This document shows, in pieces, positions 4,263 to 63,534 of a stretch of 64,000 nt of DNA. This stretch comes from Fimbriosthenelais zetlandica (taxonomy: Eukaryota): NCBI GenBank assembly GCA_977030845.1, contig OZ365109.1, positions 38,874,001 through 38,938,000 of the forward strand. The letters run 5' to 3'. The notes beneath the pieces are model-generated. The model had not been told where the DNA came from and did not search any database. It saw only the letters and a program-made list of their open reading frames with translations. Every line of letters begins with the position of its first letter. The first letter of the stretch is position 1. The position numbers and the translations under genes were made by a program.

Positions 4263-4378
4263 CTGTCATCCTCCGGACCGTGCTCTCCCCAGATCAAGTC
4301 TCTGAATCTGTAGCGAGGTGGTAAAGGTGGTACTCCCTGATTAAATATCTCAGCTTCAGTCATTGCAACATTCGTCAT
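4263..4378 (-). CDS. KCNT2: KCNT/Slo2 sodium-activated potassium channel, N-terminal coding exon (gene continues left of the window)
   Basis: MTNVAMTEAEIFNQGVPPLPPRYRFRDLIWGEHGPEDDR then phase-2 donor AG|gtggga. It matches the KCNT2 (Slick)/Slack-A start VPPLPPRYRFRDLLLGD...NDDR. The frame is open upstream to a phase-0 acceptor (attctag) at 4496-4497. Confidence 0.88.
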
Positions 4379-4539
4379 TAAAAGCGGGTAGTTATCTTCT
4401 TCTTCTTTTTTTCTTTTTTTTAGCTCTATTCCTCCTTTATCTCCAAACGGGCTGCCTGTTGCTGCAGTCGCTCCCTGAGAGAGTGGCTCCAGAAACTAGA
4501 ATGTGAGACAGCAGGCGTGTGTGAAATGTAGGCCTACCT

Positions 4540-4919
4540 CCACCCGGGTTCCTCTCGTTCTCGCTGAATTACTGTCGGACATCAGTAGGGGAGTAGTGAA
4601 CGGTTTAAGTGAGAGAGGTGGCAGGATAGTGCTGCTGGTCTTATTTTCTCCGCACCATACACAAATCATGGAACAAGCGCTCAGGTTCAATGGAAGCCGC
4701 TCCAGCTGCAGACCGCGTGGACTGCTCTAGCTTCTCTTCCTTCCACCAGATGTCCTCTCAACGCCGGAAGTTTGAAATCCATCCCATAATTTCTAATGCT
4801 TCGCGGAGCAACATCCCATCATATCAGCAGCTTCGCGGAGCACCGAAAACAAAGCGAGTGCGCATGCGCGTCATAAATCCAACATGGTGGTCTGTGGAAG
4901 TCTGTCGAGCTTTCTGTAG
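4540..4919. promoter_or_regulatory. CpG-rich bidirectional promoter between KCNT (-) and FAM20B (+), including a probable non-coding FAM20B exon ending at 4919
   Basis: ETS site CCGGAAGT (~4764), NRF1-type TGCGCATGCGC (~4859), YY1-like AACATGGTGG (4881), duplicated GCTTCGCGGAGCA, and donor TAG|gtatgt at 4920. Confidence 0.7.
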
Positions 4920-7900: not shown

Positions 7901-8706
7901 AGGTGGGATCCATTATATAGCTAAGTCTCTAGTGGTACGCATTTACCCCTGATAGGAGATGGTCACACATTGATGCCAGTTGAATGAAGCTCAGTGTTCA
8001 TCTAGAAAGATGCGCTCTACCGTAGGCCTCTAATAGACAGACCCTTTTGAATGCACCTCTCATATTTATGGTCCCCTGTTCCCTGTTCATTTAGAGTATG
8101 TTATATTGCACCCGGCTTTCCCACAGCCATGCTGCAGGGGATGCGTACAACAGGGGATTGCGGGGAAACATTGATTTTTCCTCTAGTCTATAAGAGATCT
8201 TGCCGACCCCAAGAAGCCATGAGTACTGCCGATAGTTTATTTTCATAATGTTCCCTATGTATGAATATTCATGAAATGTTTTCTAGATTTATAAATGAGA
8301 ATCAACATACATGTACTGAGAGTGGACTCTAGAAGAGCTAGAATCAATTCTGTAAGGGATACATAAATAATGATTTTTGATATGTCCTGAAGATGATTTT
8401 TAATTCGATTCTATTCTTTTTTCAATTCAATTCAAAATTTATGTCGGATGACAAATATCAATAATATACAAAGAAAACGCATAAAATCCCCGAGAAAAAA
8501 AAATATTAACCATAACTGGCTCCAATAGTTCCAGCAATGTTTTTTTGAAATTTTATGTTTTTCGAGTGTTTGACAACTTATTAATTAACCTTTAATTGAC
8601 CATACTTTCAGGTGTTGAATGCACAACTTACTCATGACAACCTCCAATGCTTTAAGCATCCCTCCACCATCATGACCAACTGATACTGAGACAACCGTGA
8701 GGCGGC

Positions 8707-9040
8707 ATGAAGCTCAAAGTCAGGATCGTCCTCTTCATTTTCATCATATTCATCTTCTATGTTTCCTTCAAAATCCTGGAGCCGGAAATCACAGACAGCT
8801 CACTGGAGGCACGAGATTTAGACGATCTCTTATTGCCTCCAGGGAGGCCGCATTTTGACAGTGGTAAAGGTGGTCTTATACGGACCAAGAAGCACAACCA
8901 GACCACAGTGGCCCTCATTGAATGGTTTCTCAAACGGTACCAGATTGATTGGAATTACAAGCTGGAAGGCTCGCCATGGGAACTCGCGGCAAGCTGGGTT
9001 GGTTCCAGACGAATCCATCCTGACCACACTCCAGAAATGG
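8707..9040 (+). CDS. FAM20B: FAM20B coding exon 1 (signal anchor to PEMG)
   Basis: ATG at 8707 in context ggcggcATG; acceptor actttcag at 8611; donor G|gtgagt at 9041. Confidence 0.95.
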
Positions 9041-12000
9041 GTGAGTGAGAAAACAAATCCCTTCTCATCAGGTTTTTTAGTTGTTTTCTTTTCATTCCCT
9101 TACTAGGATCTGTCTTTGATCCATGTGTACACTTTTCAGTACCCAGTTTATTGCCAGGGGGAGGTCTTGGAGCATGAAATCTATTGTGTGATTGTGTCCA
9201 CGGCTGTGTTATGAAAAAAAATATTCATCTCTGTATTGTTTGACAAGTGTACAGAATTAGTAGACCATAAAGATTAGTAGACATCAAAATTAGTAGACAT
9301 GCCATTTAGTAGACATGTGTACAAATTAGTAGACATAAACATTAATTAGTAGACATAAACATTAGGAGACATAAACATAAGTATAGACATAAATATTAGT
9401 AGATCATAAAAATCAGTTATCAGTTAATCAGTTCCTTCAAATTTACATCTGCTAAACATGACTGCAAATTGCTAAAAGAAATTTGGTGTCTTTATTACTT
9501 ATTCCTAAAAGAAATTTGTGGCTAGAATTAGCCCAGCAAGACTAGACTATTTCCTGTATGTAACATACAAAGCTTTTCTCGCATTATGAAATATCCCAGG
9601 AAAGTCCATTCATGCGGGAAAGTAGTATGGAAAAGCACTGTTTTAAGCAACATCATCACTTTTGTTCTCAGAGATAATGGTCTGGTAGCCATAGATCTGT
9701 GCCGTAATTGTTATTGGCATCTTTACAGTACTTGGCACAGTGCTTTGTAAAAACACAATCTTGATGATGACAGATCTGGTTCTGAGAAAGAACAGGCCTT
9801 AGATTTATTCTATATAGACCATCGCCAGTTTGTCTTTAAACAATTTAAAACACTACTTCATACATGGGAGCTATTATTTAAATTAATATGCTCATAAACC
9901 ATAATTATTGAACCGCTGTTAGATATAAAGTACGATTTCTCTGGACTGCAGTTGTCTGCTAGTTCTCAACATTGACAGTATGCCATCTAGCTTTCCATTA
10001 GCTTTCCAACGTCAAGCATCCTCATTTTAGCGGTTGCTATTTTGTCAGTTTTCCCCCAAAAGACCTACGGCTGTACATTATTGTTGGTTTCATTTCTCTT
10101 ATCAGAACCTTGTAATAACCATTGCGTATAGTGCCTCAATACCAAGACTTCATTGAAGTCTTTCTTTTATTTCTTACTTAGAACAATGGTGAAGGAGATA
10201 AAACAATGGTGAAGGAGATAAGACCATTCCAGGCCAGACACTATTGAGACTAGCATGCTCTGAAGCATCTCGTCTGTACACAGTTACAATGGGTTTGTCG
10301 AGCTCTGCTATTTTTGAAGGCGGCTCATATGATGATTGCCTTGGGCTCTGTTGAGACAACTCTATAGAGCTTAAGACGTTTAAAACCAGACACAGACAAT
10401 CCTTAGTTAAGGCTGAGGAGATTTATATCAGATTATCTTTACAATTATCCTCACTCAAGACAACAGGAATATGAAACCAGTCGAACTTAAAATATCATAA
10501 TCTTAGTAATACTTCCAATAAATGGGCCTTATAAAAAACTATTTCCTAATATCGTATCTCATTTCTTTTTTGTGTCATAGATATCCTGGATATTGCAGGC
10601 ATATAGGCATTGTACTGATAATAATGCAATAATACGTAGGTTCCCAGAGGCTGACAGCTGGCATATAATGCATTGTACTGATAATAATGTAATAATACGT
10701 AGGTTCCCTGAGCAGGCATAGAATACATTGTACTAATAATATGCATTAATATATAGGTTCCCTGAGCTGGAATTAAGTTCCAATGTCTCACATGATAGAC
10801 TAGGAGGAGCCCAATTTGCCTACTGGTATGCATCGATGATGATCCTGCGTTCCTTGCCACATTTCTGTGGTGTATTTGGTGCAGGATCTTTCATCAGAGT
10901 TACCCTAGAGGCTACGGTGCATTATCTGATGGATTATCAGGCGCCCAAAGCCTCTTCCCAATGGCTTGGATTTACCCACTGGGTAGGATACCCGTTTCCA
11001 GGAATCTTTGATTCTTTGACTCATGGTCCCTGGCTAATAAATTGTATGAATCTTCCAAGCCTTGTACCTGATACATGGTTCTTATAGCATAGACACAAGG
11101 TATAATTTAATTTGCAAAACATGCAGAGCAATTTGCTATGCAAGTTGATTTTGCATGGGAATCAGAATCCAATCAAGTGATTTTGCATAGCAATTTCTCA
11201 TCAAATTACATCGCAAAATGTGACGTGATACCGGGTAAATTATACCCAGTAGACATATAACAAATATACATAAATTAAAAAAACATATTATTCATACACG
11301 CTAGTTCTCATGTCCAAATCCCCTTTTTCTACCTAACTGAAGAATATACCATCTTTCTTAGTAGATGCTTTGATACATCGGATTTTCTTGCACATACTAT
11401 ACTATCTCGTTTATAAAAATAATAGATTGATTATGAAGACTGCGGTATCTGCTGGGATCTTCATTGATGGATTCAGAACCAGTGAGCTTTATAAACCCAG
11501 TCAGAATGATTGACTGTAAAACTGACAAATTACCAAGGAAGAAGCAAGCATTATAACAGTGAGATATATGGGTATAGGTACTGAGCTTAATAGTTGGTTA
11601 TCCCCTCAGCTGCCTCATTCTCCTAATAGATTTCCAGTTGTCCCCTTCCCCACCACTTGGAGTGTTGAATCCCAGGGGGAATGAATAGAGTAATTACTGT
11701 TTACTCACAGTGTTTAAACAGTATGGCCTTACAAACAGTTCACATGCCATTTGACCTTTTAAAAGCAATACATTGTACTATAAGGGCAATGGGCAATGCG
11801 TTTAAAAGTCATCATTTAGGGTCATGTAAATGAGCACTGAAGTGGAAGAACTTAGTAATGAAAATACCTACTGACACCCAAAATAACTTCCATCATGCAA
11901 ATGACACTATCTTTCTGAAAATCCAAAATAAATTCCATCATACAAATGACACTATCCTTCTGAACAATTGTTTCAGCAGAGTTGATGGACTGAAAAGCAC

Positions 12001-15000
12001 TTCATTTCATACCATGGATTTTTAAGCTGAAAATTTTAAAATGAAATAGAGCCATCTTGCTGTTGGAGTCAGTGATGTGTCACGATCTCCCGCCTGCTCC
12101 TTGATTAGATGCTTATGACCCATGGACGTGCCCATTATAAGGCCCTGATAGAGAATGGAATAATCAACGTGCAGTCCCATAATCATCACTGACGTGAAGC
12201 CATCCCCCTCGTTATACCCAGGATGAATGACAGAATGAGAATCTTTCCTCTACTTGCAAAAAAACTGAAGAGGGAATAACTGCGGAGATTGCAATGCAAT
12301 TTCACTTAAGGGGGAGTCTTCAGCCGTGATATACTGCTATCTTCTAATGCTAAAACCATATTCAATGCATATGGACTGCAGACAGTGGTATTTAAGTTTT
12401 ATAATGGGTGATATAACTGCACTTATAGTCTAATATCCATCCTGATATACATGTATAATGGGTGTTTATTCTTAATGTTCATTTCACTCAGAATTTCATT
12501 TGTTCCCCCATCTACATGCTCCTTGTCATATAGGAGGGGAGTTAGCTTAGTTGGTTAGAGAGCCAGGTCATACAGGGTGATTGACCAATGATCGAAGGGT
12601 CGGCGGTTCAATCCCCCGAGCTGTCTAAGGCATTTCCAATGCCTCTCTCCTCAGGGTGTTGGTGCGTTATACATGTTCTAGAGCACATGCACCTAGAAAT
12701 ATCCATTGCGCAGAAGGCAATGTATCAATGCACATAGAAAGAGCCCCGAGCTGAAAATCATACGAAAACTTGTGTAATCAAGAGTGTGAGCTGGTATTCA
12801 CCCATAACAGGCTCTATAAAAATTCTAACTAAAAAAGAATGTGGATCTTCTCAGTGAAATCGTCAACTGTCTAGACAGGGATCTTTACCACAGAGCCATT
12901 TCATTATAATCATCCAACACGCGTGACACTTAAGACACTTCAGTCGGAATAATTGCGGCAGATAAAAATTCATTCCCAGGAGCCTGTCTCCAGCTTCCAT
13001 ATGCCATATGTTGTCTAAATTAGCCCCCGAGCCATACACCTGTCCCAATTACCTTGATTCCTACAAAAAACACGTGTCTGGTGCTGTATAATTCGGATCT
13101 CCCCTGAGACCGTCTTTCCGCAGCATTCATGTAAGTTTTGGTCATGTTTATTTGTTTTGCTTCTTGTTGGGAGTGTAACTGTCGGTGGTGGGAGTTGTTT
13201 ATTCATCATGAGTAGCTCACAAGTTGCTCTTGCCATGCCGTTTACACATTAGCTTCGTCAGCCCACCTCAACCATCCATTCCCTTTGCATGATTGTGAGC
13301 AAAGAACTACAAGCATCTCTGGCAATTGCCAAATGTACAGTTTAAGTGATGCTACCTTTTCACTTGACTCTCCATGTCTATGGCTTACTCACTGATTAAA
13401 GTTTTAATGGATGTTCTACCAATAGTCCGCCCACCTTCTATACTTTTGAATACGGTGATTTGTAACTTATCTTTTCATTAAGTTTTATCCTGATAGTCAA
13501 GGATAAGGTCAAGAATATTTGAGGGAGAATTGATTAAAGACACCTATGGTTGGACTTGCCTATGAGGCAAATTGCCATTTTAAATCAAAATTTCAATTAG
13601 ATAAAATATTTTGATATCAGGGGCCTGTTGCAGAAGCAGTACATAAGGTGCCCACACACTAACCCGATTATCCATCCGGCTCCATCCGATATTTGACTAA
13701 AACTAGTATATTTCTCTTCCCACCTTATGCTTGTAATTTTATCAGTCCTTTACAACTAGGTAAGCCTAAACTCAGACGCAATTACAATCATTAGAAATGG
13801 GGAATCGGATGGCGCCGGATTGGAGAATCGGATGAGTGTATTCCACGTTGTAGTCCAATGTCCATGCTCAATATAAGAAAAGTGTTGCACAAGAAAACAG
13901 TAGTCTACATTGAGTGACAACACGCTATTTTACGAAACGTTACCAAATTTCGGTGGAAATCCTTGAATTAAGCAACAGTTGCACTTATAGGGACAACCAT
14001 GGAAGGACTAGCACTGACCAGCTGGCTTTCAACTAAAGCCAGGTGTTAGATCCCTGTGTACACCAATCCTTTCTACTCTGGCACTTTGCTGGCATAGGTA
14101 CTGCAGCAGTGATGCTCAAAGAATGCACTCTTCCTGACTTTCATGTTTCTAGTTGGAAGCAAACAGTCAAGCCGATGTGTATTCACGTTGAAGGTACCAG
14201 ATGTACACATTGACAACACCTAGTCAAGTGGGCACCAGTTCCCTGTGTATTGCCAATATCAACCCAGGAGCCTATTTCAATGGGAATATTAGTCGTAGAC
14301 TTAGCATTGCTAATATTCCTTTAGAAACCTGCCCCAGATTCGCAGTATTTATATATCACGAGATGAAAAATATTATTGGTTATTCACAATATCTGGGTGT
14401 TAATTAACTAATGGCATGTCAAGAATGTTTTTTATTCTTGTACACGTGCTAAGTTAATTAATTAAATACGCCCACTCGGAACCTTTTATTGTCACATGTA
14501 CATTTCTCGATAAGTTGATCCAAGTCTGGTTGTGATATTCAAGAGGGTGCAAAATATTCAACGTACCTTTATAGGAGTCTTGTGAAAAATGGCTAAACAG
14601 AAAATTAGCATCGCAGATATCCAGCGTCTGCTATATAAAGCTTTGATCACACTTCCAGTTGTAGATCAGTCCCGGGGGAATGCTAGAGTGGATATTGTCT
14701 ATTCATTGCCAAGCGATTGAGCATAATTAATGACCGAGCTACTCACTTGTGATTTGACCTCTCATTTATCTTAGTTTATCCTCCCAGGATTATAGAAATC
14801 CCACTGGTGAGAATTTTCTTATGCCGGGCCCACACAGAGGCGATTTACCCAAGCGGTGCAGAGCGATAGTATATTTCTAGTCACACCGAATGCTTGTAAT
14901 TTTAACAGTCCTTTAAACCTAGCTAAGGCTAACTAACCACTGACAAAATTACAAGCATCGGGTGTGACTAGAAATATACTATCGCTCTGCATCACTTGGG

Positions 15001-18000
15001 CAAATCGCCTCAGTGTGGGCCCGGCATTATACTCTCTCTTGTTGCACGATACCCTATGCTCTGGTGCTGTGAGATTCACTTGGTGTATAAATGATCGAGC
15101 TATTATAAAGCATGGAAACTAAAGGCTCCCTCTGGGCTCTTTTATATCCCAGGGCTCTATAGATAAGACCCATTATTCTTATGCTACAACGTTAGTTTAG
15201 AAGTGTGAAAGTATTAGATTGCATTGGAAATTGATGGGGGAATTCAATCTATGCATCAGCACATGCATCACATATTTGTTATTTTATCTCAAATAAATCT
15301 GACACCTTTAGGGCCTGGGATGGATTCATTGAATTATGAACTTCCTCTGGATAATCTTTTGTAAAATAAAAGTGATTGAGTCTTTGATCTCAGTTACAGT
15401 AGCCTGAAATTGTCTTTCCATGTGGCTTGGTTCAGGCACTAATTGTATACACCATGCCAGTTAGCTTTTAGAATGGATCTCATTTCGCTCGATATTAATT
15501 AGTAAAGTTTGCCGTTGAGAACTTGGCAGGGAGTGTAGTTGGCACATAGACTGGGACTTGGCTTCTTTGCCAGTACCTTCCGGGGTGGGGTGAGAACCTG
15601 CAATCAAAGCAGCTTTATGTTGGCTTAGCTTGTATTATGGTGTTATAACTACAGTTTGCTCCCTGATTTATCACACATCCTTCATGGTTTATGTCATTAC
15701 CTGATTGTATGCTGTCAACATCACCTATGTTGGGCCTGAGTTAGGGTGGGTGCATGGTGCCTATTAGATTAGATTGAGATCGGTTCATTCGGCCCTGATT
15801 TTTCAGACATGTAGGCCTCTTAATATGCTACTCGGAGATGTGATTAAATGCCATTCATTCCTTTACAAAGTTCTACAGACAATTTTTTCTACCTGACTGG
15901 AATAAATGCCATCAGAATTTTGCCTAAGGGTCAAAAGACCTTTTAAGGTTAAAATTTAAGGTTAAATTAAAATTTCCAACCATATAGAGAAAACATCTCC
16001 CGCAATAACAGTGAAATACTTAAATTTATCCCCATGAAACCATTTTGGGTTTTGTTTTTGAATGACAGACTGGGCCCCTGAGACCCCAGTTTTTCAGGTA
16101 TGTTATGTATTATTCAGCAGGGGATTCTTCGTGTAAAATATTGATAAAAGTGCTCTTCATGCATTTTTAAATTTCAAATTTCTTTAAATAATCATTGAAA
16201 AAGCACACGAATGGCTTTTGGCTTATGTACCGATGCAAGTGCTAACCATGCATATAATATCTTATATGCCTTGACAGACATAGACATTATTTTGAAATCA
16301 ATCATTGTCATGTACAATATGTCAAGATCACAATGCCATGGCTTGTCAGATCCTCTTGTACTGGGAAGTTGTACAGAACAAACCCTCAGTAAATCAATAT
16401 ACTGTATTTCCTGTTTGTGACACCTTCCATTTACTCTGTTCATTGCCAGTCAAGACCACAGTACAATTGGCCCCTCTTGAGCATTGTAATGTAGTGGGGG
16501 TCTTCATATTTTGGCGGTCACCGGGGCCTCATAGGGCAAAGGCCTTGTAGACAGTATCTCTAGTGAAGGGTAAAGGCTGCTATATAGGGCGAAACAGGGT
16601 GAAGGATCGATGGTAGGCTGCCAGTATAATATATACTCACACCCTGCTATTCAATCAATACCTGGGCTCGCTCTACCCGATCGCACTGTCGCAATTTGCG
16701 AATAAAAATACTACTTTGCTAAAAGAAAATGACTGTTATTCGCTAATTTTGCGAAATAAAAATCACACCTAACCACCGTAAAATCGCACAAATATCAGAG
16801 TTGAAGGAAAAAACCAACTAGCAATGTTTCCTTCAAATTGGCATCTGCTAACGCCAACTGCAAATTGCTAAAAGAAATTTGGTGTCTTTAGCACTTTTTG
16901 CTAAAAGAAATTTGTGGTTAGAATTAGCCCAGAATACATAATTATATCTTTGCATTTCATTTTTACTACTTTTCTTCAAGTAGCATTCCTGAAACCATGT
17001 ACCGGTCTGAAATAGATGTTAGGTTAAGTCAAATTATTAGAATCCAGGATATAATTTATCTCGCATCGCTTTTTGCGACGTAATTTGATGTATTTGCGAT
17101 AAATAATCAAAATGGCATCGCAATTTTTGCAATACATGTGATCTGCATTCTTCTGGTGGCAAAAACGATCAACTTGCATAGCAAATTTAGCAATTGTTTC
17201 AAACCAAATTGTACCCTGGAATTCTAAGATAGGTAAATTCTAGGCTTTCCCTTGCACAGTTGTTGATGATAAATCCAGTCCTATATTAGAGGTCTAGGAG
17301 GGTGGGCAGTGAGAAGTTTCATTATCCCTCACCAAGTACTATACAGTGCCTTGTCAGCAGCTTTAGGGCCGTCTTGGGAGGCCTGACCCCAGCACAGGGC
17401 CACCTATATCACTGTACCATGGACAGGATCCACATCTGAGGCTTTCACAATAAATATTGTACACCTAACCCCATTGTAAAGTGCCCTATAGCTGCCTGAT
17501 CCTAGCCACGGATGGATTTGAATCTACCAATTCTATTATTCCCAGCATTAGAGGAATTATTGTCAGGATGAGCCATATAATCTATACGTCCCCAAATCTA
17601 GTCTTAAGCCTGGACTCCACTATTGCGATTTTTCTTGCGACACAACTGCGACAAAGGTGATGCTTGTGTTGCAATGAAAAAATTTCCACTTGAGGATGAC
17701 CACAAGGCCTTGGTCACCTCAACTACAATTTTTAAATTTTATTGCAACGCAAACATCACTGTTGTCGCAGTAGTGTCGCCAGTAAAATCTCAATCACTGT
17801 TGTCACAGTAGTGTCGCCAGTAAAATCGCAGCAGTGGAGGACGGCCTTTGGATATAACTTCTTTGAGATTATTCCCCTTCCGAGAATTTTGCTAATCTTT
17901 CACATGGATAACCTTTTCATGCACTGATGAATCGACCACTGAAACAATCAGGAATCTAGACCTATATAGGCAATATACTGTCGAACTTATATATATATAT

Positions 18001-33000: not shown

Positions 33001-36000
33001 TCAGATTCTGGATATTAAGCCTATACTGTCAATCAGGGATATGTGGAAGACCCATCCATAATAGGCTTTTGGGCTGATGATCTGTTGCGTCCTATTTCCC
33101 TGTAAATGGCTCTGTACATAAAGATAATCATACTTTGGCATGTTAATCTGCCAAGGCACCCCAGAGCTATTACAGAGAACATTGGCTACAGGAACCTAGC
33201 AGGTTCAAACTATAGGTTCAATACATCTGAAGGGCAAAAGTCTTATACCGAGCCCCCATATAGGCGATTATCCAAGTGACTAGAAACTATATTTCTAATC
33301 ACACCCAATGCTTGTAATTTTACCAGACCTTTACACCTAGCTAAGGCTAACAACTGACAAAGTTACAAGCATTGGGTGTGACTAGAAATATAGTTGCACG
33401 CTGCTATCGCTTGGAGAATCGCCTATGTGGGGCCCGGAATTAGCTTAGAATCCCTTCTGTTTGTCTGTGGTACGACTTGTACACGTTGGTTGCGGGGGTG
33501 GCAACCTTACAACCAATCACCAGAACTATCTTTAAACTACCCCTGTCAATGAACTGGGCAAGTTAAACCTAGTTCCAATCAGTATTCCTCGCGGGGCACC
33601 AATAATAATCAAGTTAACACCTTGGAAGTTCAAACTTCAAATCATTATGTTGAGTGAAGACGAGAAAACATGATTAATCCAAGTTAATTTTCAAAGCAGC
33701 TGATGTAATTCGTTTTCGATACATTCTGTGAAACCAATTCCTTAACACCTGATCCCGCCTCCAAGCCTTCCATTAGCACTTTTTATGTGCAAGACTTGAA
33801 TTTCGGAAGGGAAAGAAGGTTCTCCCCTGGGTTTTTTGTTCCCGTCTCTCTCACTTCATTCCAACTGGAATGGGACTTTTGACGCCTTCTGGGATTGTTT
33901 GCCTGATTGACTGTCAATTTCAATAAGCTACATTCCTGAATTAATAGCTCTTGGCATTGACAGGCCTGGAGCCAGGACCAGAGCTGTGAATTGCAGCTAA
34001 TTTCAATCAGACTCTAGAGTAACGTTAGTTGGCCCAGAGGGAAGTAATAACTTTGACCATCTTTATGAAATGCCACTTGTGATGACTTTCGAATCACATA
34101 AATTCCCTTTCTGGACCACAGTTGTGGTAGTGGTGTAGTGGTTAGAGTGTCTGCCTCGTGTGTCGAAGGTCGCAGGTTCGAACCGCGGCCGGGTCATACC
34201 AAAGTCTGAAAAAATGAGAGTAGTGGCTCTCTTGCTTGGCACTCAGCAATAGGAGGATAGTACTAGGAATGGTTAACCCGGTGTCAGTATAATGTGACTG
34301 GGTGAAGTATCATGTCATATCATACCTCAGTGTGTTCCTCTTCTGTTTTGGAATCCTATATGGCCCGACATCTACTGTACGATCTTTGGAAAAACAGATT
34401 TTTCTGATCGGCAAAGATCAAAATAAAATTGTTCCGGATCATTTCTCTATTGATTTACCATTGAAAAATCAGCGCCGATCCCAAGATTTTGGAATCCACC
34501 AGCCCGATCATCTGTTTTTTGGGTCCCGATCGTCTGTGATCGCTTAAGATCGCAAAATCGGGATGAAAATCGGGCTGGTGGATGTCGGGCTTAACTTGAC
34601 AAACTATGACTCTGCACTTTTCCTACTTTCTAACTATACAACTTTGACAATGAGGTTTATGGATCTGGTGACAGGCTGAGTTAAGAGACTATGTTAATGG
34701 TCTATTTTGGTGATTCCCCAGTGACCTTGTTTGACTCTACAAAATTGAGTTTCAAACTGACTAGATTGCCATGACAGACCATCAATCAGCAGGCGGCCGG
34801 CGATGACTTGGCACCGGTCAGAGAAACGTGATTTACAACCTTTCACCATGGCCTATATCAAGTCAAACGACTCATCCTTCCCGCCCACTAATACAATTCT
34901 TTATTATTCGCATTATGTCGAGTGGCGACAAGAGACAGCAGGTCAGAAGTAATCGCTTTCAGCAGACAATCGTAGTAATGTCGTTATGTTTTAGTTTGGT
35001 ATGTATGGACTTGGCACAGGGGGTATAAAGCCAATGTCCTGGCTGTGATTCCAGATTAATCAGGTTAGGTGAAATGACTGTCTGGTCCTCTAGGAACTGT
35101 GTGTGTGTCATACATGCAGCCATACACAGAAGGATAACTTTAGGTTTGCGACAATTCATCTACTTCTAGTCAACTTGGATCCCAACCCAATAATTCAATA
35201 TGACACTCATATAGGTGATAGGCCTACTTTATAATATAGCCTAGCTGAAAGTGACAAGCAAGAAGTTTGGATGGAAACCCATTCATCATGTCCAGCTTGG
35301 TTTATGACCAATAAAAAGTGCTCATTTTTTAACCTAGATGACGCATCCATAATGGCCCTGCCCTATAATTGACATATCATTATGATTACCTTCCTACTTG
35401 ACAGGCTTCATTCAGGCCCTGCCCATGTTGGTATAAAGCCTGGAACACACTAATCCGATTCTCCAATCCGTCGCCATCCGAACTCCCACTTCAAATGACA
35501 TCCAAATAAATAATGTCAGTGATTAGCCTTACCTGTAGGTGAAAAGGACTGTTCAAATTACAAGCATTTGGTGTGAATAGAATTATAGTTTCGGATAGCT
35601 ATCGGATGGCGCCGGATAGAGAATCGGATTAGTGTGTCCCAGGCTTAATAATACCATGATCCTATATCTATCGCCTCAGCCACAGATTACATGACTGGAG
35701 AATAGACGTGTCTAGAATGTCCCCCAGGCTTTACCGCATCCCCTACAGCTCAATCTATCGATTGATTGGAAGAAGCCTCATGTAGAACCAGACCCGTCTT
35801 GACTTATTTGCCCAAGGTTAAGTGGTATCACATCATGTCAAGCTGTCACTATTAATATAAGGCTTGCTAATTGCCAAGTCCAATCCCCATGTCAGTACCA
35901 ACTACCTTACTTGTCTCAATCTCAGATCAGGTCTGTCAACTTTGACCAGCAGGTCGTTGTATATGCTTACAACAGTGCTTAAGCCAAACGCCCTGATGGA

Positions 36001-39000
36001 CCAATATCCAGTGAGTGGGCCAGTGAGTCTGAGATTTTATTATTTATTGTTCCCAGTGACTCCTGGAAAACCTGGAAAAAGAATTTCACTTTATCCACTA
36101 TATCCAGACAAGGAAAATTCAAGGGAATTTGAGAAAAATCAAAAAATCAGAGACAACTCAGGGAATTTCAACACTGACTTAGAAGGACAATCTTTGGGAG
36201 ATGAACGCGTACAATCCTATGTCTGCCATTGAAGTTCAGAGTGATTCATATGATTAAAATATCTCCTGTTATTTAAGTGCTTACTCAGGGAAAAATCAGG
36301 GAAAACTCAGGGAATTCAGTAATTTCATCAACTGCTGGGAGCAACGTCATTCATTACGAGTATGAGTTGAAAAGAAAAATAAAAACCATCAGAACCAGTT
36401 TAAGGTGACCTTGTCTGTATAGCTGTCTGCTTGAGACGCTGCTTCCCTTTCTGTTTGAAATTTAAGCATTGGACCCATGCCAAAATATCATTGTACTAAG
36501 TCCTACCAGTTAACGCATGAAAGCCCACAAAGGACTGAGGCATATATATCACGTTTCCCTTTACCATGCGACAAGTTTTCTCCGGTGTTCACAGTGGTTC
36601 ATGTGATTGAATTGTAAAGTGAATATTACCAAATATACTGGAAACAACAGCTTTCAAAAAACCTTTCACGGTTTGTTTTTTTTACCGAAATACAATTTTT
36701 TTTATATGATCGCAAAGGGTAAAGGTAAAAGCGCTCCTGTCCAGAAGTGACCCTTTCTTTCTTCTTCACTGCACTTGTCTCTAAAATGCAGACATTTATT
36801 CTTGCGGGGTCTGGACTCGCATAATAGACGTTTTTCCCATTCGCCTTTTTGTTTTAGCTTGACTGCGGTAGATCAATACTGATGGATTGACATAAGAAGC
36901 TATGGGGAGTTTGGCTGGTATCTGGCGGGTGTAATTGCCTCTTATACCCACTGAGAGCTGCCTCTCTTAGGAGAACCTCAGTGTTATCTTGATGAAGGCG
37001 ATCTGAGTCTTCTGATGAACAGGTTTTAGTATGATGTATTGCATGTTTGGTGTGACTAATAGCTTTGGCTACCCCAGAGTCCCTTTCCCTTTGTGAATAG
37101 GAATGAGACGCCTTGGTTTGTTTGGTTGGGTGGTCGGTCATCCTTTATTTGGCCTCTGTGGTGGTCTAGGTGGAATGCCTAATCAGTGTTTATATATATA
37201 TATATATATCCAAACAAACTTCCACGATTATGTAATGTATAAATAAACGTGCGATTTAACAATTAATTATTATCCTTGCGCTATAATGCATCAGGGTTCC
37301 CAGTGACTCTGGAAATCAGGGAAACCTGTAAAATTAGTTTCACTTTTTCCAGACAGGGAAAACTGGAAAAATCAGGGCAAACTCAGGGAATTTCCACTCT
37401 GACTCAAAAGGATATATCTCTCGGAGGTTAACGTTTACAATTCCATGCCCGCCACTGAAGTTTAGAGTGCTTCATATGACTAAAATATCTTCTGGAATTT
37501 AAGGGTTTACTCAGGGAAAACTCAGGGAATTCTGTTTTCATGAACTGCCGGGAACCCTGATATATATATGGACATTTGAACCAAAGGTATCTCATTGTAA
37601 CTTTTTATTGCTTGGGGGGTCTTTATTATATTTTGTTACGGTGTTTTATAGAATGGCTCAAGTATCATATATCGCATCATAATACATATGTGCAAGAAGG
37701 TGTTTTATATGCTTTAATAGACGCAGAAAACGTCAATACACGATGATCGATCATCCGCCGCCCCACCACTCATCCTCAGACCACCACAGGCTTATTTCTG
37801 TGTATCTTCTACTTATCTCAGTACTTCTGAGGGCGGGGGTATAGCAGTGATCACACGGGGAAGTGAGTGTAATAGCCAGAACCCACTGAGCTCCCATCTC
37901 CCTACAATCTGCTTTACCATCCAATTACGAATTTTAAAAGAATGTGGAATAAACCTACTGAAAAGTATGTGGAGTGAACCTACGACCTACGACCATGTTC
38001 CTGTGTGCTATGTGTTTTTCTCCATGGATCAGAACACTTTATTTTGAGAATGTTAACGCAGATGGTAGGGAGATAATAGCTCCGTGGGTTCAGGCTATAA
38101 TCTTACCTTGTATTCTTGAAAAAAAATTCCTCATTTTATTCCCGGTTAGAATAAAAGAATTAAATTCTTTTTTTTAAATCCTACCTTGAGAAGTACTCCT
38201 CTCCACCTAGGATACTGTCCACTGACTTCCTCTTGAGCACGGCTAGGAAACTTTGTCTCCTGTTCCCAAATCCTGGCACATCGTGAATTTGCTCCAATGT
38301 GACACGCCGGTTCACCTTTTCCCTCGTGGTGCCCGACATCACGACAAGGACGGGGGACAAGAGGGAAGAGGGGGAGACAGGGAGAAGGGAATGGAGAGAG
38401 AAAAAACGGAACAACAAAATCAAAAACTCAAGGAAGTGTAAAGTGTAGGTTTAGAACTCAGACCATGATTTCTGAACATGGGGGTATGAGAGGGAGAAAT
38501 AAAGGGGGAGAGTATCCTTGTCACATTATCTACTTGGTTAGTTTAGTAGGTGCGAGGTGTACGGGAGATAGTAGTACCAGGCGAGGGGGATCTGTTGCCA
38601 TTGGAGTTTTGGTATCCATGGAAGTGGTTGTAAGTATAAGCCGGGTTAGCTGATGGTAGTGGCAGTGGTGGTGTCAGTGATGCTGATAGAGAGATAGCTT
38701 TACTGCTTCCTATCAGACAACTCTCTCTCTCTCTCTTTCTCTGTCTATTGCTGCTACTGCTCGGAGCAGCTCCTGCAAGCTGAGGCTGGAATCCACCAGC
38801 AGGCTTGTCGCTCACAACATCATGTTCTTCTGGAGCCGGTGTGTTCGAGTACCCATCTAACCCGACCAACTGTATATATATAGCGTCCATGGGAGAAATT
38901 ACACCTTCCTAGCCTTTCCCAAGGACTTGAGTGGTTTAGTATGACAAGTAGTTCATGGGGACAAGGCCACTTGGTGCATTGTATAATAAATTACCCTAGT

Positions 39001-42000
39001 ACTTTATTCACCTTGCTGTAAACTCTTGGAATCTCAAGTACTGCAGTGGTACATAAATTGAACTTTGGAAATCTTTTACAAAGAAAAATCGAACGCACTT
39101 TCCAGCAACTGTGAAAGGGATTTTCTAAAGAAACTCGCGCTTAGTATGGACAAGGGGTTCTATGGCTGTAAAAGGTAGAGCTTACATTGCAAGACAACAT
39201 GCTGCCATCAATGTTTTAACTCTTAATATAAGTTTATCACTGGGAAAAATGTCACCCGTAAAACTGTTGGGCAGCCTGTGAATCCTTTCATTGAGCTCGC
39301 CTCCCTGTGCGTCCTTTATTTAATTGCTTTGGGAGATTGCGTGGTGGCTTCGCGTGGAGTCTTTTCTTGAAGGGATAAATCTCTTTTTGTGCCTTTTTGC
39401 CAATAAAAAAATCATGTTTCAGCTGGCATATTTCATATTCTTGTCAGTAGCTGTGGTAGAAAATGCACCTTTTGGCCTGGACTATGGATATTTTCTGCAT
39501 GTCAGTAATATTTTAATATAGGGCTTATACAGTATGAATTGACTGACCTCAGAATGGGTCAAATATAATATGAAGAAAGCCTAGACCATACATAGAACAT
39601 ACATGTGACGTGACGTATTTTCATGAAATGAGTCTAAAGTCGCACAGGGCCATTCGGAACTACATGCCTGAAAGCGTTGTAAACAAACCACTTATTTCTC
39701 TCAACATGTTCGCAATAAAAGCAAGGATACGATATTTTTTCATATTTTTTTTGTGACTGAAATTGAGAAAAGTTCTACTTTGTGCGTTATGTCCCTTCAA
39801 TATTTCTTCAGTTGGACAGATAATTGTCTGAAATGGGTATATTCTCTAGTTTCTGCAGTCACTAATTTTATGCTTTGAAATTTTATTAAAACTATAAATA
39901 TTTTTCACATCTCCTTGTACTATATATATAATAATTGAAAAGCTCATAATCTCCTCTATGCGAATCTGCAACTAATTCTATTTTGGCCTCCTGCCTTACA
40001 CATCTACTTGATATCCCTGTTATCTACTTATGTAGATGTTAACCTTCCCAGACAGGAAACTTGTGCTGACCTGAGCAATTGAGCGAGTGGTGGACCCATA
40101 ACTTAATCAGGCTACTCGTGCCAAAAGCTCGGGACATACTCTGGGACTTATCATTCTACCAAGGTCTTCTTAAAACGCTGGCATTTAAGGCCTTGTAGAC
40201 TAGGTTCTGTATTGCCTACATATACTTTGGCTCCTCTCCAATGGCTACTGTAAAATCTCTGTATTCCTGGACAGAAATAGGTCGCTTCCGGTAGTAGGAG
40301 GTTATGTGGCTCTCATATTTTTTGTATTCTTTTCTAATTCGCCCTTCCATTAAGAAAGTGCCTTTTATGGTCAGGCTTCTTGGATCATATATTGTACATT
40401 TTTCCTACAATTTAGATCCGTAGTTTTATAGTACTTTTGATTTCCCCAGACCCTTCTTACTCAGGACTGGCAGTTTACACTTCAAGGGCAGAAATGGAAT
40501 AAAGTAGTACCTTGGCCTATGTATACAAAACCCTGAAAGATATTCTATTATAATTATAGACTTGCAAATTCCTCATATATATCTGATGTGAATTATGTTA
40601 AATTGATAAGAAGTGTCCAATATTTCCCTATTTAAACTAGTGATTTTAGCTCTTTTGGTTTTTTATCTGCCTCGCAGAATGAAACTATATTTAGTTTCAC
40701 ATTTTCACATCCTCTGGCGCCGAAATTAAGCAATCACTCTCTTTGTATTTTGTGGCAGAGTAAAAAAGACTGCAAAATAATGAGTTTTCAAAAATCACTG
40801 CCAAAACCTTAGAAAAAAGATGTAGGGACCCAAAGAAAATCTGTGATCTCTGACAATTGTTTAGCTCTTTGACATGGTGCTTGTTTTTTAAAGGGAAATC
40901 TCATTAAAGGTTGCCCTTTTGAAAGGCTTCATATCTAACTGACAGACCCAATTGATTGAACCCAGTTGGTGAAAATGTCAGGTTACAATTGAGACGACTT
41001 GAGCTGTGGGTCTACTATTGAACCGGCCTTCCTTGTTATGTCCTGTAGAAAGTGGTTTGAAAGAGACTTCCCAGTCTTTTATTGANNNNNNNNNNNNNNN
41101 NNNNNNNNNNNNNNNNNNNNNNNNNNNNNNNNNNNNNNNNNNNNNNNNNNNNNNNNNNNNNNNNNNNNNNNNNNNNNNNNNNNNNNNNNNNNNNNNNNNN
41201 NNNNNNNNNNNNNNNNNNNNNNNNNCATGTCCTTAAATCACCACTCATTCATTCCCTCTCTCTCATTTTAGTTTTGTTGTCTTCTATTGATCTTGTAACA
41301 GTGTTTTGTCCTTCGCTGTGAACGAAGAAAAAGTCTTCACCATGCAATTTACTATTGTACAGTTTCCCTCTTAAATCTATTTTGGGAGGACGCACGATCA
41401 GGCAACTCTTATTATAGACACATATGATATGAAATTATAATATAATCTCGGTGATGAATATGTCAACCTGAATTATACTTATAGTTGAACCAATCTATGT
41501 CAGATTGCCAGGGAGGAAATTTCAGTTAGACTGAATGATATATTTACTTCTTATAGAAACGTGGTAATTTTATTTTTATTTTATTTTAATTTTTACAAAT
41601 CTAATTTTTAGAAAACGAACACCGACCTGAAAATACACATTTGTATTGGGAATATTTTGTGCAAAGTTCTGTCAGAAATTTCAATATTGAAAAATCTCAA
41701 TAGTAGAGAGTAGCCTTCCATGCAGATCCTAACATTAAAATGTTACTCTCTTCCAGAATGATTGAATGAGTAAAAAGATCTGTATGATGACTAATGTTCC
41801 TTCACCGCCTCATTAATCTTAACTGCTCTTTACATGCAGACGATCATGATCATCGGTCAAATTGAGTTTCATCACTCTCCTTATCTATTTCCTTTCAAGA
41901 CATAATGACTCAAAATATGATAATGTAGGTTCTTCTGAGGCAGTGTCGAGATTTGTTTTCAATTTTTCGTTAAATTCTTTTATTTTAGTCGACAAGGTTG

Positions 42001-45000
42001 GTCGGTTTTCACTTACAAACAGGAGTCTAGCAATATATTATTTAAACATCTACATGACAACTATTATAAAATGCCATCCATAATGTACACACTGGGTAAA
42101 AATCATGAAACCAATGAATGGTACAGGCATCTTGGGAACTAAATAGTACAATGTATTTTGAATCGCTTACCTGAATCTCAATTCAACAGAAGTGTCCCTT
42201 CTTAATCCCTTCATTTTTCATAGTCTCTTTTGGAAGCGATGAGTATGAATATTCCCGCCATATTTTAAGCTCCAAGTCTTGAATTATTCATTACAGAACA
42301 ATAACATCTAAGATGTCTCCTCCTTAGATTCTATGCTTCTCTATCCTTGTCCAAAAAGCAATGATGGATGTCGTGAAAGTGAATCCTCTGACTATCACTC
42401 TGACAGTGTGAAGTCATCAACGACAGTGGTGTGGAGACGGGGAGGAGCCACGGAGAGACGAGAGACTGAGAGATAAGGAGAGAGAGAGAGACAGACAGGT
42501 TATTAAAAACGATAAAGAACAAATTATAGATAGATAGAAACGAGGGAGGTACCATGGAGGGAGGCAGGGACAGACAGACGGTGGTCTTGAAATATAGAAA
42601 CAGCACGTGCGTGAAAGGGCGTTAATTTCCCATTTGCTGTTAATAATTAGAACGATTCCTATTTCGGGTCTTCTCAGAACTGACTTCTCCAGACAAACAA
42701 TTCAAAAACCCGAGGAGAACCATGCCGTCTTGTTTACCAATGCATGGCTCTATCCTAGATGCAGCTGCTATCTATATTTAGCAGGCGGAGCAGCTCACAC
42801 TGGAGGAACCCTATGAGTTGAGGTTATTATTAAACAGCTCAACCTGATATCCTACATTTAGACCTGTTGACAAGTTTACGGAAGGAAGACCTCGCGCAGG
42901 AGCAAAAAAAAAACACCGATCCTTGTCCATTTCCTTGAAGCAGGGAGGTTGTAATACTTGACGGGTCTAAATGTCAAAGTCGTACTTCTTCATCTGTCTT
43001 TCCCTGTGATGTTTGGAAGTCTTGTAGCTTGTATGTATACACTGAGGGGACCACGTCTTTGATGAGAACTGAGTCTGACCAAACTCCACTAAATGATCTC
43101 AACTGTGAAACTTCAACTGAAAGCATAATACACAGTCCTTCCCGCATTGTAGGAATCATTCAAGGGGTTAGACCAATCTTCTCAGTTTAGACACCCTATA
43201 TATTTGGACCATTCATCCCTCTAGTTGGAGGTAACCATTAGAAAGCTAGGCAGAAGGCTATATATTCATCTCGTTCAAACTTCCCATATGGACTTGAAAA
43301 AAGGCCATAATATTTAGATATAATTGATCTAGGAACTCCATTCCATTCGGGGAAACAAATACATTATATATGAGGACCATAGTTTGAAACGTACATGTAT
43401 AATAGAAATCTTTAAAAGAAAGTTGGGCTTCTCTTACATGGCCTCTTTATTTTTTTGACACATTGGCCATTTAATTAATGAAAGGCATCATTTTGATTGT
43501 GATGGCTTTTTTTATATAAATTCATTTGTGAAGGTCACTTTACAAAAGGCTAAGGTTTTTTTTAATCTAAAGACAGTGGGATTAAAATCATGGCATATTA
43601 CCACAAGCTAAAATCGTGGTTAATGTAAAGGTTTTTTATTATTTATAAAAGGTCATGAATTTAGGTTGGAAACCACTATCCTGACTATGACAGTTGGACG
43701 TGGATTCACTTTTTATAGACTGTTTGATAGGATGGGACAAAAACAGTTATAGTTGTCATGATGGTGCCTAAACGTAGAGGGATTGTGCCTTAGTCATTCA
43801 GGATTCATTGCTCCGATTGTGCATGGAACCAGCGCGTGGAAATGGCGTGGCATTTTAGTCTATCTATATACCAGAGTACTGCTGTTTATTTCCATTACTT
43901 TGATTAGCCTCCCATGTTACATGGTTATGTGTGGCCCATCAGTCCTTATAAAGATAGGAACACACATTCAGGCAAGCGAATAACAAATTTATGTCAATTT
44001 TATGAGATATTATCAATTTTGAAGAATAATTCCTACAAATTACTCCACCAATGGCTACTGATTGCTGTGGATAGTGTAGTTACTGTGTATTAATGCTCTG
44101 TGATGGGTATTTATCTGCTCAAACAGATAATATGTTAAGGTATGCCTTGCTATGTTCTATTCTCCAATTCGTTCAACCCAATAGTAAATATTAAAATCAA
44201 TAGTAACTGTTATGGCCAGGAAAAGAAAATCTTGTCTGTTCTTGATCTCTTTGTGTGTTCCTGGCCTAAGACTCAGAAAGCAAGATTGGCGTTTATATGA
44301 AGCACACATAAGCGAATTACAAGCTTTGGGCGTGATTACAAATATACTATCGTGCTGCATCGCTTGCGAAAATCGCCTTCATGCTTAAGTTTGTAAAAGT
44401 TCCTCTGCAGATTACTGGTCAACAGGCATTAGATATGAATACATTGATTCTCCCTCATTGTTTTATGTAGCATTATTATCATACCCTCCTCTGTCTATTT
44501 ATCAGGGGCTATATTGAGGAGGATGAATGAGGCTAGGATTTTGAGTGCGGATGTCGGTCATCGCGGTACTCAGCTCAAGATGTCGCTGGTACTGGAGGGC
44601 AATCAGCGGGCCGCATTTAAACCGCGATGGTACAGCCGTGACTACGTGGTTACAGGAGAGCCCTACGCCGGGGGAGACAGGCACAATGGTGAAATAGCTG
44701 CTTTTACACTCAATAGGTACGTCACATTACTTTGTTTGTGATAATTTACTTTATAATTTTTTCTCATGGTTTCCTGTTACTTTGGAAATTAGGGAGAACC
44801 TAGAAAATTAGTTTCACTTTTTCCTGACAGGTAAAACTCGGGGAATTTGAGAATGATTCGAAAAATCAGGGAAAAGTCACGAAATTTGAGAAAGATTGGG
44901 AAAATTAGGGAAAACCCAAGCAATTCCAACACTGTATACAATCCCATGCCCACTACTGAAGTTCAGAGTGCTTCATATGACTAAATTATCTCCTGGAGTT

Positions 45001-62942: not shown

Positions 62943-63312
62943 CTAGTTGAGTGAAAAAATGTTTTTAATTATTTATGTCAAAGAGATGGAAATCATTTAT
63001 GAAATATTGACAGGAAACTGTGGACAAGTACTCAGTGGAGATCAGAATCCAAAGAGATATCTAACTTGGCCATCAATTCCAATCGTTAATACGTATGTGA
63101 TAATGGAAACAGTTGTAATGGATATCGCTTCATCAATATTTGCAGAATCAATACAAATTAGCCCTACATGTATCTATAATCGCTAAAACATTGTGCAGTG
63201 CCAGCTTCATATAAGGGCACATAATATACATAATACCATTGATGAAAATGTCAAGAATTATAGATTCCACATTTTCGTTAGACAAGATGCCATTAAGAAT
63301 TGTGTCTTTTAC

Positions 63313-63458
63313 CTTGAGTAGAATATATGATGTGATGACTGTCCACACCACAAAGGAGACTGCAGCTAATGTTTGTACACCCAGCAAGTACCAGTTGCCT
63401 GTTTTGATGACTCCACCAGTCCCAGGGATAATACTGTAACGTTCATCGATAAATAATC
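63313..63458 (-). CDS. amt: Second ammonium transporter 'Amt-A' (5' part beyond the right edge), exon equivalent to Amt-B exon 7
   Basis: cactacag| GLFIDERYSIIPGTGGVIKTGNWYLLGVQ...YILLK |gtaaaa; same 146-nt length and phases as Amt-B exon 7; 27/49 aa identical by manual count. Confidence 0.92.
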
Positions 63459-63534
63459 CTGTAGTGGGAATAACATGGGGGAAAATCATGAATATACCTT
63501 GCATTTTGAGTAGACGTTTTAGTAAAGTAGGGGG

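What the first reader, a model, noticed from the sequence alone, without database searches (positions are those of the whole stretch)
4263..42214. Interleaved antisense genes: a possible array of KCNT alternative first exons inside the giant FAM20B intron
Seen: the first FAM20B coding intron is 35.5 kb (9041-44505), while its other coding introns are under 1.8 kb. On the opposite strand it holds ATG-initiated open exons with good donors in phase 2 (38339-38185, 42214-42171). That is the phase of the KCNT donor at 4263, and no other minus-strand gene body was found between them and KCNT. Known: mammalian Kcnt1 uses alternative promoters to make N-terminal isoforms (Slack-A, -B, -M) with different gating, all joining a shared exon. 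Inference: KCNT transcripts start up to ~38 kb inside FAM20B, so the first two FAM20B exons and their promoter sit in a KCNT intron. This would be a neuronal promoter array overlapping a housekeeping Golgi kinase, with potential for transcriptional interference.
Basis: partly seen in the sequence, partly recalled or inferred. Interest (0 to 1): 0.8.

Follow-up and report, generated by a model that had tools for sequence, protein, structure and literature searches.

The report
Conserved alternative first exon near KCNT
One of the two hidden exons proposed inside the big FAM20B intron is a real protein-coding start exon, conserved in a distant relative, and it probably gives the neighbouring KCNT potassium channel a second N-terminus; the other looks like chance, and no RNA data could be found to prove the join.

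Summary
On sequence features alone they match chance: simulations expect about 2.8 such phase-2 ATG-to-donor stretches in this interval.

Comparative data separate the two candidates. The exon at 38339-38185 (- strand) is conserved in two gap-free contigs of a distant relative. It lies on the same strand, about 6 kb upstream of FAM20B exon 2, as it does here. The ATG and the next 12 bases are identical, the donor is conserved, and the indels are whole codons. In the last 27 codons, 12 codon differences are synonymous and 2 are not. The surrounding intron cannot be aligned. This is a real first coding exon.

The 14-codon exon at 42214-42171 shows no conservation and has two upstream ATGs. I treat it as chance, so there is no "array".

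I found KCNT exon 2 137.6 kb left of the window. Its acceptor needs a phase-2 donor, which both the known exon 1 (4378-4263) and the conserved exon supply. No other conserved exon lies within 52 kb downstream in the relative.

Assigning the exon to KCNT is the best explanation (about 0.55) but is not shown: no sequencing runs were listed, so no junction reads could be examined.

The parts
38185..38339 (-). Conserved ATG-initiated first coding exon (51 codons + 2 nt, phase 2, donor AAG|GTAGG). It is the candidate alternative KCNT N-terminus. The conserved core is [16 protein letters not shown](I/V)LGGEEYFS.
   Evidence: tblastn to relative contigs gives E 1.5e-15. blastn gives 83-84% identity over 38180-38261, against 76-77% for FAM20B exons. 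The last 27 codons have 12 synonymous and 2 nonsynonymous codon differences. dN/dS is about 0.14 over the whole exon, with pN 0.048 and pS 0.74 in the core. Alignments are A1 and A2. The exon is single copy in G000.
38428..38438 (-). Short block (CACtTCCTTGA, 10 of 11 bases invariant) about 90-100 nt upstream of the ATG. It may be a core-promoter or 5'UTR element; the evidence is weak.
   Evidence: Invariant columns in alignment A1. No ATG lies between this block and the start codon in either species.
4263..4378 (-). KCNT exon 1. It is the conserved Slick/Slack-A-type N-terminus with the motif VPPLPPRYRFRDLIWG, and its donor is in phase 2.
   Evidence: Four relatives found among short ORFs. 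Matches human KCNT1 chain 8hir_A residues 59-79. Sequence.
8707..9040 (+). FAM20B coding exon 1 (signal-anchor and stem), donor in phase 1.
   Evidence: The splice sites and the continuous frame into exon 2 are shown. Its identity rests on exon 2 and later exons and on my recollection of the human N-terminus.
9041..44505 (+). FAM20B intron 1 (35.5 kb, with two N runs). It hosts the conserved antisense exon.
   Evidence: At least 15% is interspersed repeat, judged by comparison within 264 kb.
44506..44716 (+). FAM20B exon 2.
   Evidence: Best solved-structure match is Hydra Fam20B xylosylkinase 5xom, E 5e-16. 89% amino-acid identity to the relative's ORF P0009.
42171..42214 (-). 14-codon ATG-to-donor stretch proposed as a second alternative exon. 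It is not supported.
   Evidence: Its best local alignment to the syntenic interval of both relative contigs equals the shuffled background. The one weak peptide hit has no ATG or donor. Two out-of-frame or terminated upstream ATGs lie within 50 nt. A donor this strong in phase 2 is expected by chance with p 0.14.
37900..38107 (.). Interspersed repeat of about 200 bp lying just inside the putative intron, 78 nt beyond the donor.
   Evidence: The first look found 976 candidates genome-wide; the 40 that were scored matched at 77-82% identity.
41086..41225 (.). N run between the conserved exon and FAM20B exon 2.
   Evidence: The arrangement across it agrees with the gap-free relative contigs.
30867..31076 (.). 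N run in the putative intron downstream of the conserved exon. Its left flank is a CATC/TATCCATC tandem repeat.
   Evidence: Continuity could not be tested.

Best explanation
Window 38339-38185 (- strand) is a real, conserved first coding exon lying antisense in FAM20B intron 1. Most likely it is an alternative 5' exon of the KCNT (Slo2-type, Slack/Slick-like) channel gene.

On this reading, transcripts starting near 38.4 kb skip FAM20B exon 1, the shared promoter region and KCNT exon 1. They splice over about 175.8 kb to KCNT exon 2 (G000:C1:38736415, acceptor ...ttttcag|A). This replaces the 38-codon PPLPPRYRFRDL N-terminus with a 51-codon N-terminus carrying two invariant basophilic kinase-type sites (RRQS and KRKS).

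Shown: the exon is coding and conserved; its strand, phase and position; and the location and phase of exon 2.

Inferred: the splice to KCNT, a promoter of its own, and any effect on gating or trafficking (by analogy with rat Slack-A and Slack-B).

The 42214-42171 stretch is chance.
For: Exon reality:
- ATG plus 12 further bases identical, donor AAG|GTAGG conserved, whole-codon indels only, phase 2 kept in window, L037 and L043.
- 12 synonymous against 2 nonsynonymous codon differences in the last 27 codons.
- dN 0.20 and dS 1.42 for the exon, against dN 0.12 and dS 1.52 for FAM20B exon 2.
- Apart from repeat-family matches, the only blocks of L037 that align to the 264 kb region are the FAM20B exons and this exon.
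- Same strand and a similar distance to FAM20B exon 2 in both species.

Link to KCNT:
- Same strand, upstream of KCNT.
- KCNT exon 2 acceptor found at C1:38736415; it needs a phase-2 donor and gives R-VRVEFF, as exon 1 does.
- KCNT identity of the gene body: pore exon against KCNT1 5a6e and 5u70, E 1e-20; BK_channel_a exons on C1.
- No other conserved coding block within 52 kb downstream in the relative.
- No Pfam domain in long ORFs of the FAM20B intron or of KCNT intron 1.
- Precedent: rat Slack N-terminal isoforms are driven by independent promoters (PMC3850776).
Against: - No RNA evidence. No runs were listed for this sequence, so no junction could be seen.
- Phase agreement alone has a 1 in 3 chance.
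- The donor is only moderate on a generic matrix (4.3 bits, against 5.5 for exon 1).
- The intron would be 175.8 kb and would cross FAM20B exon 1 and KCNT's own proximal promoter.
- No protein with this N-terminus appeared among 1.84 billion representatives, among short ORFs or in the PDB. These blanks are weak, because the relative's own 68-aa ORF is absent from the collection.
- In the relative, neither FAM20B exon 1 nor KCNT exon 1 was reached, so linkage of this exon with KCNT in a second species is not shown.
Confidence: 0.55

Rival explanations
1. The conserved exon is the first coding exon of a separate, so far unrecognised - strand gene, not KCNT. Its remaining exons would be short, poorly conserved or far away, for example inside the 142 kb KCNT intron 1.
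For: Nothing ties the exon to KCNT except strand, order and phase. The peptide has no detectable similarity to any KCNT N-terminus in the PDB or in the large protein libraries. tblastx would miss exons shorter than about 25 codons.
Against: No second conserved coding block was found within 52 kb downstream in the relative or anywhere in the 264 kb examined here. No Pfam hit in long ORFs. The one extra block, at about -82 kb relative to the window, is a repeat with at least 40 copies.
Confidence: 0.3
2. The block is a conserved non-coding element, for instance a FAM20B intronic enhancer or an antisense non-coding RNA exon, that merely happens to be open.
For: It is a short island (about 155 nt) in a long intron of a housekeeping gene. 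GC is locally raised, 0.47 against about 0.39.
Against: Substitutions fall overwhelmingly on synonymous positions of one frame (12 against 2; pN 0.05, pS 0.74). Indels are whole codons, including a 13-14 Gly run. The ATG and the GT donor bound the conserved stretch exactly.
Confidence: 0.08
3. Both candidates are chance ATG-to-GT open stretches in a long intron.
For: Counts, lengths and phases match the simulated expectation. This does fit the 42214-42171 stretch.
Against: For 38339-38185 it is excluded by conservation at tblastn E 1.5e-15 in a lineage whose synonymous sites are saturated and whose introns do not align.
Confidence: 0.03

Closest known systems
Rat/mouse Kcnt1 (Slack) N-terminal isoforms Slack-A and Slack-B, driven by independent promoters (Brown et al. 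2008, as reviewed in PMC3850776)
   Same: Alternative ATG-containing first exons would join one shared second exon that begins the conserved VxVEF(F/Y) segment. One N-terminus is the Slick/Slack-A type (PPLPPRYRFRDL), which here is exon 1 at 4378-4263. The other is unrelated in sequence.
   Different: The isoform here is inferred, not observed. Its peptide shows no detectable similarity to solved KCNT1 chains. It lies 34 kb upstream, inside a neighbouring gene's intron. No functional data exist.
Interleaved or nested antisense gene pairs, where a promoter or exon of one gene sits in an intron of a neighbour on the opposite strand
   Same: The exon sits antisense in FAM20B intron 1. If it belongs to KCNT, then FAM20B exon 1 and the intergenic promoter region lie within a KCNT intron.
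   Different: Such arrangements are common in animal genomes. What is notable here is only that the position, about 6 kb upstream of FAM20B exon 2, is kept in a relative with saturated synonymous divergence.
FAM20B glycosaminoglycan xylosylkinase (Hydra Fam20B, PDB 5xom)
   Same: The host gene's exons match Fam20B best (E 5e-16, against 4e-5 for Fam20C) and carry the Fam20C Pfam domain.
   Different: Nothing unusual in the coding sequence was seen. Only the first intron is long.

Membership tests
KCNT / Slo2 (Slack-Slick) channel gene, for the gene to which exon 1 at 4378-4263 belongs | K+ pore with TVGYGD; best match is KCNT1 rather than other K+ channels | tested here: met
   L023:9530-9841:- hits the KCNT1 pore (5a6e E 1.3e-20, 5u70, 8hir). 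The next family scores 1e-7. Ion_trans_2 domain found.
KCNT / Slo2 (Slack-Slick) channel gene | Cytoplasmic RCK region (Pfam BK_channel_a) on the same strand downstream | tested here: met
   C1:38716167-38716274 and 38715137-38715286 (-), 51.6 and 36.7 bits.
KCNT / Slo2 (Slack-Slick) channel gene | Slick/Slack-A-type N-terminal motif PPLPPRYRFRDL, followed by exon 2 VxVEF(F/Y)xNE..FKERL | tested here: met
   (human KCNT1 residues 59-79). Exon 2.
Alternative first exon of KCNT (claim for 38339-38185) | A real exon: coding constraint, conserved start codon and donor | tested here: met
Alternative first exon of KCNT (claim for 38339-38185) | Same strand, upstream of the shared exon, donor phase matching the shared acceptor | tested here: met
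   Phase 2 in all three sequences. The exon 2 acceptor needs 2 nt from the donor.
Alternative first exon of KCNT (claim for 38339-38185) | Transcripts joining the exon to KCNT exon 2 | not testable with these tools
   No RNA or DNA runs were listed, so read laying could not be used. No matching spliced product in the protein searches, which are weak blanks.
Alternative first exon of KCNT (claim for 38339-38185) | A promoter or transcription start of its own | tested here: inconclusive
   A TATA-like run at about 38880-38871 is not conserved. An 11-nt conserved block lies at 38438-38428. CpG o/e is low, 0.36-0.46.
Alternative first exon of KCNT (claim for 42214-42171) | A real exon: conservation in the syntenic interval | tested here: not met
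   Local alignment score 13, against a shuffled mean of 12 and maximum of 16. No homologous ATG or donor.
FAM20B (host gene) | Fam20 kinase domain, closest to the xylosylkinase subfamily | tested here: met
   5xom E 5.3e-16, against Fam20C 4e-5. PF06702 at 3.6e-23 and 1.5e-17.

The most novel reading that the evidence does not exclude
The exon marks a second, conserved promoter of the KCNT channel gene embedded antisense in the first intron of FAM20B, so that the two genes interleave. This layout would have been kept across a divergence at which synonymous sites are saturated. The resulting channel isoform would have a new N-terminus with two invariant kinase-type sites, which could tune gating or surface delivery as the Slack-A and Slack-B N-termini do in rat.
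Probability: 0.45. Interest if true: 0.5.

Novelty: new member of a known kind. Interest (0 to 1): 0.4.

Why it matters
If the join to KCNT is confirmed, N-terminal isoform switching by alternative promoters would not be a mammalian peculiarity of Slack. It would be a recurring way of diversifying sodium-activated-type K+ channels.

It would also supply a compact, conserved 25-residue module ([24 protein letters not shown]) to test for kinase control of the channel.

It would explain part of the unusually long first intron of FAM20B, and would tie the two genes together physically.

For annotation, it is a coding exon that ORF-based or homology-based pipelines would miss, because nothing like it is in the protein libraries searched.

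Tried and rejected
- Sequencing runs: two look-ups (RNA, then any) on 38.1-39.0 kb listed none, so read laying was unusable.
- phmmer of the 51-aa peptide against 1.84 billion representatives gave 0 hits.
- A word-indexed search with the 89-aa ORF gave 0 hits, and the PDB gave 0. These blanks carry little weight: the relative's 68-aa ORF is not in the collection. The positive control with the KCNT exon 1 ORF found 4 relatives.
- JGI metagenome contigs: the protein-pattern scan and a degenerate DNA pattern for [11 protein letters not shown] both found nothing.
- Rfam on the whole window gave no match.
- I walked the relative's contig ctg38966 to 52 kb beyond the exon. I found no FAM20B exon 1, no KCNT exon 1 or 2, and only shared repeats. 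No further gene calls were available to continue.
- A block matching at about -82 kb relative to the window looked collinear but is a repeat with at least 40 copies.
- A weak peptide hit for the mini exon (RDTSV..) has no ATG or donor.
- In-frame splicing of the conserved exon into KCNT exon 1 was considered. The good acceptor-like sites upstream of, or inside, exon 1 are out of phase. The only in-phase AG (..caacaggcag|CCCG) lacks a pyrimidine tract (read). Rejected as unlikely.
- Brown et al. 2008 (PMC2652154) is not held, so the genomic layout of the rat exons could not be compared.
Full report
**Setting**

The window is G000:C1:38874001-38938000 of a 447 Mb animal assembly. Median CpG o/e is about 0.5, and Amt-type ammonium transporter exons lie at 57-64 kb. 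I infer from these that it is an invertebrate; the organism was not identified.

**Checking the observation**

FAM20B:
- Exon 1 is 8707-9040, with donor ATGG|gtgagt.
- Exon 2 starts at 44506, after ...tatcag.
- The joined frame reads straight through.
- Exon 2 matches Hydra Fam20B xylosylkinase 5xom at E 5e-16, better than Fam20C. Later exons carry Pfam Fam20C.
- Intron 1 is therefore 9041-44505, about 35.5 kb. That figure is nominal because the intron holds N runs at 30867-31076 and 41086-41225.

On the - strand:
- 4378-4263 encodes the conserved KCNT N-terminus with VPPLPPRYRFRDLIWG.
- Short ORFs from four other organisms share this motif, and so does human KCNT1 chain 8hir_A at residues 59-79.
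- 38339-38185 (155 nt) and 42214-42171 (44 nt) are ATG-initiated, open and followed by GT. Like the 116-nt exon 1, both are in phase 2.

**The rest of KCNT**

Pfam BK_channel_a exons lie at C1:38716167 and 38715137 on the - strand. I fetched 200 kb left of the window and found:
- the pore exon, which hits KCNT1 5a6e and 5u70 at E 1e-20;
- exon 2 at C1:38736415-38736336, with acceptor ...ctcttttcag|A GTT CGA GTA GAA TTT TTC, reading R-VRVEFFTNEKSFKERLQLYFIKNQRS.

This acceptor needs two bases from the upstream donor, so any alternative first exon must be in phase 2. The intron from 4263 is 141.8 kb. From 38185 it would be 175.8 kb.

**Is the pattern more than chance?**

I used a generic metazoan donor matrix whose frequencies I recalled from the literature, so they are approximate. 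The donors score 5.5 bits (4263), 4.3 bits (38185) and 7.6 bits (42171).

Three hundred third-order Markov simulations of the - strand of 4379-44505 gave these results:

| Feature | Expected | Observed | p |
|---|---|---|---|
| Phase-2 ATG-to-donor stretches of at least this quality | 2.79 | 3 | not significant |
| Phase-2 stretches of at least 155 nt | 0.28 | 1 | 0.25 |
| Phase-2 stretches with a donor of at least 7.55 bits | 0.15 | 1 | 0.14 |

**Searches that came back blank**

- No sequencing run, RNA or DNA, was listed for the region.
- The 51-aa peptide found nothing among 1.84 billion representative proteins, among short ORFs or in the PDB.

**The turning point**

The FAM20B exon 2 ORF found two ORFs at 87-89% identity. 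One lies on a 2.66 Mb ENA contig (ERZ25767047 ctg38966, locus L037). A cluster mate lies on a second contig of the same sample (ctg38542, locus L043) that is about 91% identical at the DNA level, so it is a haplotype or a homeolog.

In both contigs the 38-kb exon is present:
- It is on the strand opposite to FAM20B, about 5.9 and 6.7 kb upstream of FAM20B exon 2, against 6,167 nt here.
- tblastn gives E 1.5e-15.
- At the DNA level, window 38180-38261 aligns at 83-84%. That is higher than the FAM20B coding exons (76-77%). Apart from matches to shared repeat families, nothing else in the intron aligns.
- The alignment (A1; A2) shows ATG plus the next 12 bases identical and a conserved donor AAG|GTAGG that ends the conserved stretch.
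- Indels are whole codons only: a 13 or 14 Gly run in the relative. Phase 2 is kept.
- The core [16 protein letters not shown](I/V)LGGEEYFS is invariant apart from one I/V change.
- In the last 27 codons, 12 codon differences are synonymous and 2 are not.
- Nei-Gojobori values are dN 0.20 and dS 1.42 for the exon (core: pN 0.048, pS 0.74). FAM20B exon 2 gives dN 0.12 and dS 1.52.

With synonymous sites saturated, this is strong evidence for a protein-coding exon read in this frame. In the relative an in-frame stop lies 10 codons upstream of the ATG (read), so the exon is a first coding exon.

The relative's 68-aa ORF is not in the protein collection. That explains the earlier blanks and means they carry little weight.

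The exon is single copy in G000. An interspersed repeat of about 200 bp lies just beyond its donor, at 37900-38107.

**The gaps**

No exon or frame crosses an N run. The 10 kb piece between the two N runs carries the conserved exon. Its order, strand and distance relative to FAM20B exon 2 match the gap-free relative contigs, which supports the assembly across 41086-41225. The run at 30867-31076 is flanked on its left by a CATC-type tandem repeat and could not be checked. I did not try to fill either run.

**The second candidate**

The 42214-42171 stretch has no counterpart in the syntenic interval of either relative contig:
- Its best local alignment equals the shuffled background.
- The one short peptide hit lacks an ATG and a donor.
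- Two upstream ATGs, one terminated and one out of frame, lie within 50 nt.

I treat it as chance, so there is no array.

**To which gene does the conserved exon belong?**

In favour of KCNT:
- It is on the same strand, upstream of KCNT.
- Its phase matches the exon 2 acceptor.
- There is precedent in rat Slack, where N-terminal isoforms are driven by independent promoters and change activation kinetics and Slick co-assembly (PMC3850776).
- No competing gene was found. Long ORFs in the FAM20B intron and in KCNT intron 1 have no Pfam domain.
- In the relative, no other conserved coding block occurs within 52 kb downstream of the exon. This argues for a very long intron, as expected if the partner is KCNT exon 2.

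Against:
- There is no junction evidence.
- Phase agreement has a prior of 1 in 3.
- I did not reach FAM20B exon 1 or KCNT in the relative, so conserved linkage with KCNT is not shown.

A separate unrecognised gene remains a serious rival. I put KCNT at about 0.55, another gene at about 0.3, a non-coding element at under 0.1, and chance at a few per cent.

**Promoter**

The evidence is inconclusive:
- A TATA-like run at about 38880-38871 is followed by six or more upstream ATGs and is not conserved.
- An 11-nt block at 38438-38428 is conserved, and the roughly 100 nt between it and the ATG are free of ATGs in both species.
- CpG o/e there is low. The region between KCNT exon 1 and FAM20B (4.5-5.25 kb) is the window's CpG-richest.

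**Comparison with what is known**

The arrangement works like Slack-A and Slack-B: two ATG-bearing first exons and one shared second exon. Exon 1 is the Slick/Slack-A type. The new peptide resembles no solved KCNT1 chain. Nested antisense exons are common, so this is a new member of a known kind rather than a new kind.

**Verdict**

One conserved extra first exon is real and is probably KCNT's. The "array" and the interference idea are not supported by evidence. Interest is moderate.

Noticed in passing
window 57396-58016 (-) and 63151-63588 (-): Amt-type ammonium transporter exons (PF00909, E 7e-58 and 6e-4) lie downstream of FAM20B. There are probably two tandem Amt genes on the - strand.
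   Followed up: partly
window 37900-38107: Interspersed repeat of about 200 bp, probably SINE or MITE-like. The first look found 976 candidates in G000; the 40 scored matched at 77-82% identity. It lies 78 nt beyond the conserved exon's donor.
   Followed up: partly
window 25011-25073, 27538-27628, 34187-34315; also L037:10964-11127 and 17087-17346: A second short repeat family is shared between this genome and the distant relative's contigs at 70-90% identity. The element family is therefore older than, or has been active since, the split of the two lineages.
   Followed up: no
L037 (ctg38966) against L043 (ctg38542), ENA ERZ25767047: The relative's sample holds two copies of the whole FAM20B/antisense-exon locus, about 91% identical including introns. 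They could be divergent haplotypes, homeologs or two close species in one sample.
   Followed up: no
L037:3940-3985 (-), L043 equivalent: The relative's version of the conserved exon carries a run of 13 or 14 glycine codons (GGA/GGG) that is absent here. The two copies differ by one codon, so this is an unstable in-frame repeat inside the variable half of the exon.
   Followed up: partly
window 4501-5250: This is the highest GC (0.50-0.53) and CpG o/e (about 0.8) in the window, between KCNT exon 1 and FAM20B exon 1. It is a likely shared or divergent promoter region. A FAM20B 5'UTR exon there was not verified.
   Followed up: no
window 38546-38908 (-): A 121-codon open frame, low in complexity, lies upstream of the conserved exon. 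It has no Pfam hit and no conservation in the relative, so it is probably not coding.
   Followed up: partly
G000:C1:38736417-38878262 (left of the window): KCNT intron 1 is about 142 kb in a 447 Mb genome. Several long open frames in it are tandem-repeat translations, and none has a Pfam domain.
   Followed up: partly
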